A DNA stretch of 62,911 nucleotides, the filler included, from Octopus bimaculoides (taxonomy: Eukaryota): assembly GCF_001194135.2 (NCBI RefSeq). It is 6 parts of 6 records of this genome, joined end to end, with 100 filler letters (N's around TTAATTAATTAA, not from the genome) between each part and the next. Parts side by side here need not be neighbours in the genome. Positions count along the whole stretch, not along the records: positions 59,144 to 62,911 come from NW_026366363.1; 5 more parts are not named here. One strand, written 5' to 3'. Below, one piece after another: positions 58,941-62,911 of this stretch (positions are counted from its first letter, which is position 1; each line of letters starts with the position of its first letter). The position numbers and the translations under genes are program-made. Under the pieces are notes generated by a model. It had not been told where the DNA came from. It did not search any database and saw only the letters and a list, made by a program, of their open reading frames with translations.

Positions 58941-59152
58941 ATGGCAGTGACTTCTACGACGATAAAAGCTGTTTTGTGGTTGCTGCCATAATTGTTGTTT
59001 TTGGTTTGTGTGGTGGCGGTGATGGCGGCGATTGTGATGGTAGNNNNNNNNNNNNNNNNNNNNNNNNNNNNNNNNNNNNNNNNNNNNTTAATTAATTAAN
59101 NNNNNNNNNNNNNNNNNNNNNNNNNNNNNNNNNNNNNNNNNNNTACGTTACC

Positions 59153-59225
59153 GGCCAGCCATGAGACTCGAACTCACATCCCTGTGATTATGCATCAGGT
59201 GCTTTACCATTAAGCTAAACTGCCC
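59153..59225 (-). other. tRNA-like sequence with CAT-centred loop (pseudo-tRNA or SINE head)
   Basis: GGGCAGTTTAGCTTAATGGTAAAGCACCTGATGCATAATCACAGGGATGTGAGTTCGAGTCTCATGGCTGGCC. D and T arms fold; the anticodon stem has a 2-nt insertion and the acceptor stem a mismatch. Confidence 0.5.
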
Positions 59226-59586
59226 AGTATCATCATCATTAACAAGCAACTGGATTTGTACTCTTCCAGTAGACCAGGCTTGCTATTGCTGTCACTTTCT
59301 TTCGTAGATGGTCACAATGTGGTTGTGGCGTTGGTTGCAGATTAGTGGAGGTGACCAAGTCAAGTTTGCCCATATGAACTTGGTGTCTGGGCAAGGATCT
59401 ATTTAACTTACACCCAAACNNNNNNNNNNNNNNNNNNNNNNNNNNNNNNNNNNNNNNNNNNNNNNNNNNNNGAATGAATACTACAAGGTAACTTAAGTAG
59501 AGTTGACCATGTGCATATTTGAACAAGGTCTCTGGTTTGAAAATAATCTCTTCCCTCTCCGCCCTACATACGCACAAATATCTTAA

Positions 59587-59816
59587 CCCTTTTGATACCA
59601 ACCCAGCTGAAACCGCCTCTGGCTCTNNNNNNNNNNNNNNNNNNNNNNNNNNNNNNNNNNNNNNNNNNNNNNNNNNNNNNNNNNNNNNNNNNNNNNNNNN
59701 NNNNNNNNNNNNNNNNNNNNNNNNNNNNNNNNNNNNNNNNNNNNNNNNNNNNNNNNNNNNNNAAAGTAATTGAAAGAAACACAGAGCATTTCAAAATAAA
59801 TACAGTAATGAAGGGG
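59587..59816. mobile_element. piggyBac-like MITE, middle in a gap
   Basis: TTAA|CCCTTT...AAGGGG|TTAA termini, with TTAA at 59583-59586 and 59817-59820. Confidence 0.55.
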
Positions 59817-59961
59817 TTAAAGACCCTGAAAATAGATAACGGGTGCAGGCCATCAACCAATTAAATCATTAAAGTTAACAACAAAAAGAAAAAAATAGTT
59901 CCACAATTCTCAGAATTTATATTCCACTAATTTTTCTGCATTGTTCTGACAATCTCCTCAG

Positions 59962-60052
59962 AATTTGGTCTTAGCAGATTCCGGCATCTATCGTTGTAAT
60001 GCTAGCAACAAGTATGGAATGGTTTCAGCAACAAGGACACTTATAGTTCGAT
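59962..60052 (+). CDS. Nrg: Exon: C-terminal half of an Ig domain (L1-family Ig5-like)
   Basis: ctcctcag|AAT...CGA T|gtgagt, 91 nt, phase 0 to 1. Translates NLVLADSGIYRCNASNKYGMVSATRTLIVR (D-x-G-x-Y-x-C motif). An in-frame TGA just upstream supports the acceptor. Confidence 0.85.
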
Positions 60053-62698
60053 GTGAGTATATTTATTTGTCACTTATTTCCTTCCCACCCATCTGTCTAG
60101 GATGTTACTAGCTAACACGGGCACTCCAATGTCTGCAAGAGCCATATTTCACTTTGTATGTCTACTCCAGGATGCTGATGGAGAACTGCTCCTTATTTAT
60201 ACATAAACCATGCATCTTTGCAGACAAGACAAAATTTAAACACTTTCCAGTAGATTTGTTGGTGTGTAAAGGGGAAGATGCAAAACTCACATGTGTTGTN
60301 NNNNNNNNNTAGATTTGTTGGTGTGTAAAGGGGAAGATGCAAAACTCACATGTGTTGTCATGACTGACCCTATGCAGATTGACAATCTGCATGTTGTTTG
60401 GTTCAAGGATGATGATATCATAGCCATTGATGAGAAGAGAATCATCCAGAAGCCCAAAGNNNNNNNNNNGATGATATCATAGCCATTGATGAGAAGAGAA
60501 TCATCCAGAAGCCCAAAGACAATTCATTGATCATCAGGAGTGTAAAACAAAGGGATGCTGGCCTCTATTCATGTGTGGCCACAAATGGATTGGATTTTAT
60601 CAAAGCGTTTGCCCGTCTCCAAGTAAGAGGTAGGTTCATTTTACATGTATGTGTGCCATTCTCCCACTCTCCAGTTGTCACCTATGTCTGTGTTCCCCAG
60701 GATTCAATTCTAACTATGAGACTGGTCCTTCAATAAAGTAACAGATACGGATGGTGATTAGCTAGGAGTGTAATTTGCAGTCACAAGTTTCTGAGTTCAA
60801 TCTCTCTGTAAGGTATCTTGGACAAGAAACATATATATATANNNNNNNNNNTATATATATATGTTTCTTGTCCAAGATACCTTACAGAGAGATTGAACTC
60901 ATATATATGCATATGTATGTATAAATATATATATGCATATAAATGTATGTATATATGTAAAAAAAAAATTAGTGAAAAGAGTTGAGAAAAATTTTTTCCA
61001 AAATTCCATGTGAAATATATGGAAAAGAAGGAAAATGCACAAAAATGTTATGTTGGGAAAAATATATTTATGAAATAAAAAATATTTACATAGTCAACCA
61101 GTTTCGCTTCTACTCTTCATAATGAAGTAGTTAATGTTAATGTTATAATTTCATGCTATCATAAGTTGTCATTCTACATCAGTAGATCAGATATTTTGTA
61201 AGACACAGACACACGCACACACACACGGATGTATATACATACACACAAACATAATTCATATTTCATTGCAGTCAAGATAAGAATTGAAGTCTCTCCATCG
61301 AATCTGGAGGTGAACAAAGAGGCAGATGCAAAGTTCATGTGTGCTGCCACAACTGACTCCATGGAGGTCAACAACCTGCAGATCACATGGCTGAAGGATG
61401 ATAAGGTCATAGACATTGATGAGGAAAGAGTCATCCAGAATTACAAAACTGGTTCATTGACCATCAGGAATGTAACCAGAAATGATGTTGGCCGCTATAC
61501 ATGTGTGGCCACAAATGGATTGAATGTTGTCAATGCCTCAGCCCTTCTCACAATCAAAGGTAAGCTCATTTTGTTCACCCACACACATATATAAGCATCA
61601 GCTTAAAAGTTCATGGGCTGACCAAGATAAATGANNNNNNNNNNNNNNNNNNNNNNNNNNNNNNNNNNNNNNNNNNNNNNNNNNNNNNNNNNNNNNNNNN
61701 NNNNNNNNNNNNNNNNNNNNNNNNNNNNNNNNNNNNNNNTCCTGTTGCTTAAAAATGTCAGCAAAAGCAAATATGAAGTTGATCAAGAGCAGATTTGGTG
61801 TCATCACTGCAATACTAGTTTCCAGCAAAGAGTTTCTTCATTTTGGGGAATGGATGATTGTCAAATGGGGCTTATATTCAGAATAGGGATGGTGATCAAC
61901 TATTCCAAAACCACAGTGATGCACAGCAGCCATTGAAAGTAAGGACTTGTGTGCAGGGGAATTGTCTTAATAAAACAAGAGCACTTTTGTTAGTTTTCCT
62001 AGGAGTTTGGTCTTCATAGCCCTTCATAACTGCCTCATGTATGCATATGTATGAAAGTTTGAGTGTGTGTATGTTTGTGTCTCATTCTCTTGTTATCATG
62101 TGATTGTTGCAAATGAAAGTTGATCATTTCTTCCATTTTACAAAAACATAAGGTGACAAGCTGGCTGAACTGTGAGAACACTGAACAAAATACTTAGCAG
62201 TATTTCGTCCTTTACATTCTAAGTCCAAATTCTACCAAGGTTGACTTGGCCTATCATCAACGAGTCCAGAGTCAATAAAAAAAAAATGACCAGTTAAGTA
62301 ATGGGGCCGATATAACTGATTAGTTCCCTCTCCTCAAAAAGTAATGGCCCTGTGCTGAAATTTGAAAATATATTTGGCAAAACCATGTCTTGCTACCTAT
62401 AGAGAAATATTACTTTATTTGGAAATAGGTGAGTGCTGGCAACAGGAAGAGCATCCAGCTATGGAAATTCTGCCTTAATAAACTATGTTTGACTCATGCA
62501 AGCATGAGGCATGGGTCTTATGATGCTGCTGCTGATTAGATATGATGATTATGTGTGTGTATGATAGTGATGCTCTTCTCTTTCAGTTACAGGTACCCAG
62601 CCACCTGTGATGTTAATCAACCTACCTGCCCAGGTACTGTTTAAAGAGTCAGAGATTGTGGCACTTCCATGCAAGGCCAGTGGTGAACCACAACCTAC
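59962..62698 (+). CDS. Nrg: Partial L1/neuroglian-family Ig cell adhesion gene, join(59962..60052,60224..60629,61272..61559,62587..62698); 5' and 3' exons not seen
   Basis: Four segments with canonical AG/GT boundaries and compatible phases translate without stops into I-set Ig domains. Motifs match L1-family Ig5, Ig6, Ig6 and Ig1. The symbol is family-level; orthology is not established. Confidence 0.8.
60224..60629 (+). CDS. Nrg: Exon: complete Ig domain, Ig6-like copy A (true length 288 nt)
   Basis: ttgcag|AC...AGA G|gtaggt. Removing two 10-N gaps and their 49-bp duplicated overlaps gives (Y)KTKFKHFPVDLLVCKGEDAKLTCVVMTDPMQIDNLHVVWFKDDDIIAIDEKRIIQKPKDNSLIIRSVKQRDAGLYSCVATNGLDFIKAFARLQVR, with the canonical C...W...Y-x-C. 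Confidence 0.85.
61272..61559 (+). CDS. Nrg: Exon: complete Ig domain, Ig6-like copy B
   Basis: ttgcag|TC...AAA G|gtaagc, 288 nt, phase 1-1. Translates (V)KIRIEVSPSNLEVNKEADAKFMCAATTDSMEVNNLQITWLKDDKVIDIDEERVIQNYKTGSLTIRNVTRNDVGRYTCVATNGLNVVNASALLTIK. Confidence 0.9.
62587..62698 (+). CDS. Nrg: Exon: N-terminal half of an Ig domain (L1-family Ig1-like)
   Basis: ctctttcag|TT...CCT AC|gtaagt, phase 1 to 2. Translates (V)TGTQPPVMLINLPAQVLFKESEIVALPCKASGEPQPT. A second in-frame acceptor at 62592 gives a 106-nt exon. Confidence 0.8.
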
Positions 62699-62911
62699 GT
62701 AAGTATTGTTGTTTGAGTGTAGTGGGGGTGGTGTAGTCGTGTGATTGTGGTGGTGGCAGTGTGGACATGATAATTTTGTGGTGTGCAGATATGTGGTGGT
62801 GTAGTGGAAGGAGATGCTGTAGGGAGAAGGGTTTTATGAAAAGTATTACACCTTCTTTCTCTCCTTCTTTCCCTTTCTTTCTCAGCACATATATATATAT
62901 ATATATATATA

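What the first reader, a model, noticed from the sequence alone, without database searches (positions are those of the whole stretch)
60224..61559. Tandemly duplicated symmetric 288-nt Ig6 exons: candidates for mutually exclusive splicing
Seen: both exons are 288 nt, phase 1-1, align without gaps at 44/96 aa identity (hand count) and keep their frames and splice sites. Copy A has an extra Cys (LLVCKG) and no N-glycosylation sequon; copy B has two sequons (NVT, NAS). Because phases match, A, B, A+B or neither can be spliced in frame. Inference: old, selectively maintained duplicates that tune ectodomain length or specificity.
Basis: partly seen in the sequence, partly recalled or inferred. Interest (0 to 1): 0.7.

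Follow-up and report, generated by a model that had tools for sequence, protein, structure and literature searches.

The report
Duplicated Ig6 exon in octopus neuroglian
An orphan Octopus bimaculoides scaffold carries two intact, fast-diverging copies of the exon for the sixth immunoglobulin domain of a neuroglian/L1-type adhesion gene, but nothing in the sequence forces them to be spliced mutually exclusively.

Summary
The two 10-N gaps inside exon A are each flanked by exact 49-nt duplicates, which are unmerged contig overlaps. Collapsing them gives a 288-nt, phase 1-1 exon. It aligns without gaps to exon B at 45/97 residues and 206/288 nt. Both exons are full I-set domains.

The gene is a molluscan neuroglian/L1-type adhesion gene, not the annotated 'peroxidasin'. 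Both exons correspond to its single Ig6 exon. Six gastropod, bivalve and unidentified relatives have one Ig6 followed by FN3.

The copies do not look old. 38 of 42 conserved degenerate codons are identical. dS is about 0.2-0.3 and omega is 1.1-2.0. Homology stops sharply 25 nt upstream and 13 nt downstream, so the copied unit was about 326 nt. Pure neutral decay is unlikely (joint p about 0.002).

No known mechanism for mutual exclusion is visible. The intron is 642 nt, all sites are GT-AG, 288 is divisible by 3, and no intron pairing exceeds shuffled controls. Phase 1-1 is the ancestral state of this exon.

The "downstream constitutive exon" at 62587 is really the homologue of exon 2 (first half of Ig1), joined across a 105-N gap. 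That join is suspect.

Mutually exclusive splicing remains possible (about 0.2) but unsupported.

The parts
59962..60052 (+). Exon for the C-terminal half of Ig5 (NLVLADSGIYRCNAS...TLIVR). It starts in phase 0 and ends in phase 1.
   Evidence: 63% identical to the Ig5 C-half exon of L005 (7900-7956, E 9e-6) and 53% to Patella. Same start (cag|AAT) and same phase-1 end as the L005 exon.
60224..60629 (+). Exon A, the first Ig6 copy. It is 406 nt as assembled and 288 nt once 60300-60358 and 60460-60518 are removed. Phase 1-1, complete I-set domain, three Cys, no N-glycosylation sequon.
   Evidence: (I-set E 8.1e-14, profile 2-90/90).
60300..60358 (.). Assembly artefact: 10 N plus a second copy of the preceding 49 nt.
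   Evidence: Exact 49-nt direct duplicate across the gap (family D4).
60460..60518 (.). Assembly artefact: 10 N plus a second copy of the preceding 49 nt.
   Evidence: Exact 49-nt direct duplicate across the gap.
60199..60223 (+). Upstream edge of the duplicated unit at copy A. It is homologous to 61247-61271 at copy B.
   Evidence: 18/25 identical at positions -1 to -25 (p 1.8e-5), falling to 15/75 at -26 to -100.
60630..60642 (+). Downstream edge of the duplicated unit at copy A. It is homologous to 61560-61572 at copy B.
   Evidence: 11/13 identical (p 7e-5), falling to 12/62 over the next 62 nt. Seen also in family D1.
60630..61271 (+). Intron between A and B, GT-AG, 642 nt as assembled. 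It holds a 10-N gap between 50-nt perfect inverted arms (60792-60841 and 60852-60901), AT-rich microsatellites, and a (CA)n tract at about 61196-61250.
   Evidence: (pair I1).
61272..61559 (+). Exon B, the second Ig6 copy: 288 nt, phase 1-1, complete I-set domain, two sequons (NVT, NAS). It is closer to the ancestral sequence than A.
   Evidence: I-set E 1.4e-16; 11 derived changes against 20 in A.
62587..62698 (+). Exon homologous to exon 2 of molluscan neuroglian genes (N-terminal half of Ig1, directly after the signal peptide), phase 1 to 2. It is joined to exon B only by scaffolding across the 105-N gap at 61635-61739.
   Evidence: It matches only the N-termini of the Patella, Biomphalaria and Haliotis neuroglian-like proteins (E 6e-6 to 2e-5). 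It has the same phases and the same end, inside the codon after GEPQP, as Patella exon 2.

Best explanation
**What it is.** The piece is the whole of an unplaced 3,768-nt Octopus bimaculoides scaffold (LGKD02071493.1). It carries part of a neuroglian/L1-type immunoglobulin cell-adhesion gene. Exons A and B are two copies of the gene's single Ig6 exon. They were made in the octopus lineage by copying a segment of about 326 nt: the 288-nt exon, 25 nt of acceptor flank and 13 nt of donor flank.

**State of the copies.** Both have been kept as intact, spliceable, complete I-set domains. Outside the fold core, their amino acids have been replaced unusually fast. A has changed more than B.

**How it is probably spliced (inferred).** Each exon encodes a self-contained domain. 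The intron between them is long and of the ordinary U2 type. Double inclusion stays in frame. The default outcome is therefore inclusion of both, giving a stalk one Ig domain longer. Independent cassette skipping of either exon is possible. Obligatory mutual exclusion is not the expected outcome.

**Shown versus inferred.**
- Shown: the duplication, the identity as Ig6, the sharp edges of the copied unit, omega of about 1 or more, and the absence of any visible exclusivity mechanism.
- Inferred: the splicing outcome and the functional role.

My confidence in the duplication and in the gene family is about 0.9. My confidence that the pair is not obligatorily exclusive is about 0.6. The overall figure given for this explanation reflects the weaker, inferred part.
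For: **Scaffold and annotation**
- The scaffold and its gene model (XP_014790332.1) are identified.
- That model joins the upstream exon straight to B and omits A. A is unreadable as assembled.

**Gene family and Ig6 identity**
- A and B each hit only the one Ig6 exon in L005 (E 2e-24 and 9e-26) and in Patella vulgata (E 1e-24 and 3e-25).
- The exon boundaries and phases of the Ig5 C-half and Ig6 exons are conserved.
- The named relatives are 'neuroglian' or 'neuroglian-like'.

**Single copy elsewhere**
- L001, L005, Patella, Batillaria, Candidula and Tegillarca each have one Ig6, followed by FN3.

**Sister copies and timing**
- A and B share seven derived residues absent from all outgroups.
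- Third-position identity is 73/95 between A and B, against 22-41/95 for comparisons with outgroups.
- 38 of 42 conserved degenerate codons are identical.

**Selection**
- Omega is 1.7-2.0 by maximum likelihood. The likelihood-ratio test gives p 0.04-0.10 against omega = 1 and about 1e-11 against omega = 0.2. The Nei-Gojobori estimate is 1.08.
- Unconstrained mutation would rarely keep both frames open and all six hallmark residues (p about 0.002).

**Copied unit**
- Its edges are sharp on both sides, and there is no flank homology beyond them.

**No exclusivity mechanism**
- The intron is 642 nt, the sites are GT-AG and both exons are 288 nt.
- No intron-intron complementarity exceeds shuffled controls (z from -0.9 to +1.4), apart from the palindrome at the gap.
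Against: - There are no transcript data, so the splicing outcome is entirely inferred.
- The L1 family's layout of six Ig domains followed by FN3 holds in every mollusc examined. A seven-Ig version would be unusual, which argues for using one Ig6 at a time.
- Omega of about 1 or more, with low dS, is also the pattern reported for alternatively spliced exons. This last point rests on my own knowledge and was not tested here.
- Parts of both relevant introns are unread (gaps at 60842-60851 and 61635-61739), so pairing elements could be hidden there.
- The scaffold is an orphan built from seven small contigs, and its last exon is out of place. Copy number and order at the real locus are therefore uncertain.
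Confidence: 0.55

Rival explanations
1. A and B are mutually exclusive alternatives. Each transcript carries exactly one Ig6, which keeps the canonical six-Ig ectodomain while offering two surfaces: A with a free Cys and no glycans, B with two glycans.
For: - The formal candidate criteria are met: adjacent exons, equal length, equal phases and homology. These are the criteria set out in PMC3228551.
- All other molluscs examined have exactly one Ig6 before FN3.
- Amino acids diverge rapidly on a conserved fold core, as expected for alternative binding surfaces.
- If the 326-nt unit was first inserted head to tail, the original spacer of about 38 nt would have been too short to splice. That would have enforced exclusivity at birth. 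This is my inference.
Against: - None of the known enforcing mechanisms is visible. The intron is 642 nt, so there is no steric block. All sites are U2-type GT-AG. 288 is divisible by 3, so double inclusion is not removed by nonsense-mediated decay. No docking/selector pairing exceeds shuffled controls.
- Each exon encodes a whole autonomous domain, not a piece embedded in a fold.
- Phase 1-1 is inherited from the single-copy exon and says nothing about splicing.
Confidence: 0.2
2. One copy, most likely A, is not used. Alternatively, the whole scaffold is a non-functional or mis-assembled fragment, so the pair has no splicing biology.
For: - Omega is statistically indistinguishable from 1 under two of three codon-frequency models.
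- A carries about twice as many derived changes as B, and an unpaired Cys.
- A has a competing GTAAGA donor 7 nt upstream of its proper donor, at 60623.
- The scaffold is unplaced and is made of 150-1,172-nt contigs.
- An Ig1 exon follows Ig6.
- The only gene model omits A.
Against: - Both copies keep exactly 288 nt with no indel, open frames, AG/GT sites and all six hallmark residues. The joint probability under unconstrained mutation is about 0.002, before indels are counted.
- A keeps 34 and B keeps 37 of the 55 columns that are invariant among outgroups, so A is not markedly more degraded.
- The gene model's omission of A is explained by the gap artefacts.
Confidence: 0.12
3. The two copies are the visible part of a larger array of Ig6 exons that the short-read assembly collapsed or broke. 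That would be a Dscam-like cluster.
For: - Exon A is split over three contigs that end at shared 49-mers. Contigs break this way where several near-identical paths exist.
- The scaffold never joined the main assembly.
- The pattern of divergence suggests diversifying selection.
Against: - Only two copies are seen on the scaffold.
- No other octopus protein sharing words with A or B is in the searched collection.
- Heterozygosity or low coverage would explain the contig breaks equally well.
Confidence: 0.08

Closest known systems
Neuroglian / L1-type IgCAM genes of gastropods and bivalves (for example Patella vulgata neuroglian-like, Batillaria, Candidula, Tegillarca)
   Same: - Ig5 and Ig6 are homologous in sequence, at 40-52% identity for Ig6.
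- The exon boundaries and phases match for the Ig5 C-half exon, the 288-nt Ig6 exon and exon 2.
   Different: - Those genes have one Ig6, followed directly by FN3-1. The octopus scaffold has two Ig6 exons and no FN3 exon.
- Ig6 is 56-82% identical among those genera, but both octopus copies are far more diverged.
Arthropod Dscam1 exon 9 cluster (whole Ig7 domain encoded by mutually exclusive exons)
   Same: - Tandem copies of an exon that encodes a complete Ig domain of a neuronal adhesion receptor.
- The copies diverge in surface residues on a conserved core.
   Different: - Dscam has dozens of copies. Their exclusivity relies on conserved docking/selector RNA pairing plus repressors (PMC8042237 and PMC6071210, listed).
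- Here there are two copies and no pairing above chance.
- The gene family is also different.
Domain-repeat expansion by exon duplication in Ig/FN3 proteins, where both copies are constitutive
   Same: - A symmetric phase 1-1 exon that encodes one whole domain is duplicated next to itself.
- Both copies remain in frame when included together.
   Different: Such expansions are typical of long repeat proteins. Here the expansion hits a family whose six-Ig layout is otherwise fixed.
Generic mutually-exclusive-exon candidates as defined by WebScipio (PMC3228551)
   Same: [quoted passage not shown]
   Different: - That paper stresses that true mutually exclusive exons usually encode a region embedded in the surrounding structure.
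- It also lists exons with all these characteristics that turn out to be constitutive or differentially included as false positives.

Membership tests
Mutually exclusive exon pair | Adjacent homologous exons of equal or similar length, with identical phases and intact splice sites | tested here: met
   288 nt each, phase 1-1, AG/GT, 45/97 residues and 206/288 nt identical.
Mutually exclusive exon pair | The two exons never occur together, and never both fail to occur, in mature transcripts | not testable with these tools
   No octopus transcript data are reachable. Exact look-ups found no independent contig.
Mutually exclusive exon pair | Steric block: the intron between the exons is too short to splice | tested here: not met
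   The intron 60630-61271 is 642 nt as assembled, and its 10-N gap can only add length.
Mutually exclusive exon pair | Incompatible U2/U12 splice sites | tested here: not met
   All four sites are GT-AG with U2-type donors (GTAGGT, GTAAGC).
Mutually exclusive exon pair | Double inclusion or double skipping shifts the frame, so nonsense-mediated decay polices it | tested here: not met
   288 = 3 x 96. All combinations of A and B stay open.
Mutually exclusive exon pair | Competing docking/selector RNA structures in the flanking introns | tested here: inconclusive
   No intron pair exceeds dinucleotide shuffles (z from -0.9 to +1.4). Only simple (CA)n/(TG)n tracts flank B. Introns are partly unread and no second species is available for a conservation check.
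Neuroglian / L1-type IgCAM | Ig domains orthologous to L1-family Ig5 and Ig6, with conserved gene structure | tested here: met
Neuroglian / L1-type IgCAM | Six Ig domains followed by FN3 repeats | tested here: inconclusive
   No FN3 exon is on the scaffold. The exon after B is an Ig1 N-half homologue, reached across a 105-N gap.
Neuroglian / L1-type IgCAM | Transmembrane segment and ankyrin-binding cytoplasmic tail | not testable with these tools
   These parts are not on the 3,768-nt scaffold, and no other octopus fragment of the gene was found.
I-set immunoglobulin domain (PF07679) | Full-length profile match with the Cys...Trp...DxGxYxC core | tested here: met
   A: E 8.1e-14. B: E 1.4e-16. 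Both cover profile positions 2-90 of 90. Core residues are kept in both.
Peroxidasin (the name on the NCBI record) | Closest relatives are peroxidasins; leucine-rich repeats and a haem peroxidase domain are present | tested here: not met
   The closest named relatives are neuroglian-like proteins. The best solved structures are Robo, titin, DCC and contactin. Nothing but Ig sequence is on the scaffold.
Dscam-type hypervariable exon array | Many tandem copies of one Ig exon | tested here: not met
   Only two copies were detected on the scaffold in all six frames. Collapsed copies cannot be excluded.

The most novel reading that the evidence does not exclude
Octopus neuroglian offers two alternative Ig6 domains, or more if copies were collapsed in assembly. 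They are chosen one per transcript and kept different by diversifying selection. This would be the first mutually exclusive whole-Ig-domain choice in an L1-family gene and in a mollusc. It would be an independent, young parallel to arthropod Dscam exon 9, arising by a route (a roughly 326-nt copy with minimal flanks) that could have enforced exclusivity from the start.
Probability: 0.17. Interest if true: 0.65.

Novelty: new member of a known kind. Interest (0 to 1): 0.35.

Why it matters
- The six-Ig ectodomain of L1/neuroglian molecules is among the most stable layouts in animal adhesion receptors. A lineage-specific extra Ig6 exon in an octopus, diverging with dN/dS of about 1 or more, is a small but concrete case of that layout being altered in a large-brained mollusc.
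- If the copies prove to be alternatives, it would show how an exon choice of the Dscam kind can begin.
- There is also a practical lesson. Two 10-N gaps with duplicated flanks made exon A unreadable. The public gene model therefore skips it, splices Ig6 onto an Ig1 exon and carries the name 'peroxidasin'. Similar unmerged overlaps elsewhere in this assembly may hide other exons in the same way.

Tried and rejected
**Searches that gave nothing**
I then dropped it, because any Ig query would be swamped by giant multi-Ig proteins.
- Three word-indexed protein searches returned no cephalopod homologue other than the scaffold's own model. The copy number in other cephalopods therefore could not be checked.
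- Literature searches found no paper on cephalopod neuroglian splicing or on mutually exclusive exons in L1-family genes.

**Readings I considered and rejected**
- *The gaps and flanking repeats are real sequence.* Rejected, because exon A would then have stops in every frame.
- *Gene conversion explains the low dS.* Rejected. The 82 differences are evenly spread and the longest identical run is 23 nt. Any conversion tract that homogenised synonymous sites would also have erased the interleaved replacement sites.
- *Shared codon bias explains the identical codons.* Rejected. Different codons for the same amino acid are matched position by position, and comparisons with outgroups give only 25-50% identical codons.
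- *The duplication is old and intron homology has simply decayed.* Rejected in favour of a small copied unit. Identity drops abruptly from 72-85% to about 20% at -25 and +13. A neutral flank at the exon's level of divergence would still score 44-75.
- *The exon at 62587 is a seventh Ig or an Ig5-like half.* Rejected once it matched only the Ig1 N-termini, with identical exon phases.

Structure prediction was not run. The collapsed exon A cannot be submitted, and a model would not bear on splicing.
Full report
**What the piece is.** Positions 59144-62911 are the whole of a 3,768-nt unplaced scaffold of Octopus bimaculoides (GCA_001194135.2, LGKD02071493.1). It carries one predicted protein of 145 residues, XP_014790332.1, named 'peroxidasin homolog, partial'. 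The scaffold is built from seven contigs of 150-1,172 nt separated by runs of N.

**The gaps, tested first.** Gaps 60300-60309 and 60460-60469 are each flanked by an exact 49-nt direct duplicate. This is what unmerged contig ends overlapping by k-1 look like.
- Read literally, 60224-60629 is 406 nt with stops in all frames.
- With 60300-60358 and 60460-60518 removed, it is 288 nt, open, phase 1-1, with an AG acceptor and a GT donor.
- The collapsed peptide matches Pfam I-set across positions 2-90 of 90 (E 8.1e-14). It aligns without gaps to exon B and to the Ig6 of other molluscs. The collapsed reading is therefore correct.
- The public gene model goes from the upstream exon straight to exon B (…TLIVR-F-KIRIEV…). 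It evidently does so because exon A is unreadable as assembled. That omission is not evidence of skipping.
- The third gap (60842-60851) lies in the A-B intron between perfect 50-nt inverted arms.

**The observation.**
- Exon B (61272-61559) is 288 nt, phase 1-1.
- A and B share 45/97 residues and 206/288 nt with no indel. This is far beyond chance: local score 59, against a shuffle maximum of 12.
- A has a third Cys (LLVCKG) and no sequon. B has NVT and NAS.
- All junction combinations stay in frame.

**Which gene.** The nearest relatives in the protein collection are 'neuroglian' or 'neuroglian-like' proteins. They come from Patella, Haliotis, Biomphalaria, Batillaria, Candidula, Crassostrea, Tegillarca and others, plus unnamed animals in marine metagenomes. 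Comparison with genomic loci settles the orthology exon by exon.
- The upstream octopus exon (59962-60052) is the Ig5 C-terminal half. It has the same start and the same phase-1 end as in L005.
- A and B each match only the single Ig6 exon, in L005 (E 2e-24 and 9e-26) and in Patella vulgata (E 1e-24 and 3e-25).
- In L005 that exon is also 288 nt and phase 1-1.
- So 'Ig6' is right. The symmetric phases are simply inherited and carry no information about alternative splicing.
- The NCBI name 'peroxidasin' is not supported.

**Single copy elsewhere.** L001, L005, Patella, Batillaria, Candidula and Tegillarca all have one Ig6 followed by the first FN3 domain. The duplication is therefore absent from every gastropod, bivalve and unidentified relative that could be examined. 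No other cephalopod sequence was reachable.

**The exon at 62587 is out of place.**
It is not FN3.
- It matches only the extreme N-termini of the gastropod proteins, the N-terminal half of Ig1 directly after the signal peptide (E 6e-6 to 2e-5).
- It has exactly the phases of Patella exon 2: it starts in phase 1 and ends in phase 2, inside the codon after GEPQP.
- It is linked to exon B only across a 105-N gap.
- Either that contig is mis-scaffolded, or a second, paralogous gene starts there. Tandem paralogues do occur in molluscs. The Bulinus model P0024 runs from Ig4 straight into another Ig1, and Patella has several neuroglian genes on one chromosome.
- Junction tests that use 62587 as the constitutive acceptor would therefore mislead.

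**Age and mode of divergence.**
- Third-codon-position identity between A and B is 73/95. Against the outgroup exons it is 22-41/95.
- At residues conserved between A and B, 38 of 42 degenerate codons are the very same codon. Comparisons with outgroups give 11-23 of 43-49.
- Seven residues are shared by A and B and absent from all outgroups. The copies are therefore sisters.
- Synonymous divergence is modest (dS 0.21-0.34), while dN is 0.36-0.46.
- Pairwise codon likelihood gives omega 1.7-2.0. That is better than omega = 1 at p 0.04-0.10, and better than omega = 0.2 at p about 1e-11.
- Polarising with outgroups assigns 20 changes to A, 11 to B and leaves 21 unresolved.
- Elsewhere in molluscs Ig6 is well conserved, at 56-82% between genera including bivalve against gastropod. 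The octopus copies are only 40-52% identical to any of them.
- Neither copy is decaying freely. In simulations of unconstrained mutation, both frames stay open in 10-15% of trials, the six hallmark residues survive in both copies in about 1%, and both conditions hold in about 0.2%. Neither exon has a single indel or a lost splice site.

**The copied unit.**
- Beyond the exon, similarity continues for 25 nt upstream (18/25) and 13 nt downstream (11/13). It then drops at once to about 20%.
- Sensitive local alignment of the remaining flanks is at shuffle level. A neutral flank at 25-35% divergence would score 44-75.
- The simplest reading is that a segment of about 326 nt was copied, carrying little more than the exon and its splice signals.
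- It either went into the Ig5-Ig6 intron, or went in head to tail with later insertions. If it went into the intron, A (the faster-evolving copy) would be the new one. This part is inference.
- Gene conversion and codon bias were considered as explanations for the low dS and rejected; see the field on what was tried and rejected.

**Does anything enforce mutual exclusion?** The known mechanisms were checked one by one.
- Steric block: no. The intron is 642 nt as assembled.
- U2/U12 incompatibility: no. All sites are GT-AG.
- Frame policing by nonsense-mediated decay: no. 288 is divisible by three.
- Competing RNA structures: none found. Repeat search and RNAduplex between all intron segments give nothing above dinucleotide shuffles (z from -0.9 to +1.4). 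The one exception is the palindrome around the intron gap. Simple (CA)n and (TG)n tracts flank exon B and could pair, but such tracts are common.
- The criteria paper for predicting such exons notes that true cases usually encode a segment embedded in a fold. It also notes that look-alikes can be constitutive or differentially included (PMC3228551). Here each exon is a whole autonomous domain.

**Verdict.**
- The duplication is real, specific to the octopus lineage among the molluscs examined, young by synonymous sites, and evolving quickly in both copies.
- The most likely splicing is inclusion of both, with optional cassette use. I put the probability that the pair is not obligatorily exclusive at about 0.6.
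- Strict mutual exclusion remains a live possibility at about 0.2, because the six-Ig layout is otherwise invariant.
- A dead copy or garbled scaffold gets about 0.12, and a collapsed larger array about 0.08.
- Only transcripts and a contiguous assembly can decide.

Noticed in passing
window 62587-62698: The exon taken as the downstream constitutive exon is the homologue of neuroglian exon 2 (the N-terminal half of Ig1, after the signal peptide). It has the same phases as in Patella. It follows Ig6 only across a 105-N gap. This suggests either mis-scaffolding or the start of a tandem paralogue.
   Followed up: yes
window 60792-60901: A perfect 50-nt inverted repeat surrounds the 10-N gap in the A-B intron, centred on a (TA)n run. 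It gives weak, sub-threshold hits to miRNA hairpin models (49 bits against a gathering score of 119). It could be a real hairpin or MITE-like element, or a fold-back assembly artefact.
   Followed up: partly
window 59153-59224 (- strand): A tRNA-like sequence scores 34.6 bits against Rfam tRNA, above the gathering score of 29, but ARAGORN calls no tRNA. It is probably a tRNA-derived SINE head or a tRNA pseudogene.
   Followed up: partly
window 61196-61250 against 62046-62084 and 62553-62569: A (CA)n tract just upstream of exon B's acceptor is complementary to (TG)n tracts in the intron downstream of B (80-85% over 20 nt). Pairing would loop out exon B. These are simple repeats and the complementarity is not above shuffled controls.
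   Followed up: partly
window 60623-60628: Exon A contains a good-looking competing donor (CAA|GTAAGA) 7 nt upstream of the donor that homology requires (GAG|GTAGGT at 60630). Using it would shift the frame.
   Followed up: no
window 60572-60592 and 61502-61522: The CVATNGL codons are identical over 21 nt in A and B and contain the 10-nt palindrome TGTGGCCACA. The two exons can therefore pair with each other (27 nt, 81% complementary). The outgroups encode the same motif with different, non-palindromic codons.
   Followed up: partly
P0024 (Bulinus truncatus); P0015, P0022, P0023 (Patella vulgata): Molluscan neuroglian genes occur as paralogues on one chromosome. One Bulinus model runs from Ig4 directly into a second Ig1-Ig3 series, which looks like a read-through of tandem genes. 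Many annotated 'neuroglian-like' proteins of about 420 residues stop after Ig4, although Ig5, Ig6 and FN3 exons follow within 2 kb (Patella L006 18460-20279).
   Followed up: partly
window 60300-60358, 60460-60518: 10-N gaps whose flanks overlap by exactly 49 nt may be a systematic feature of this assembly. Wherever they fall in exons, they will break frames and make gene models drop exons, as happened here.
   Followed up: no
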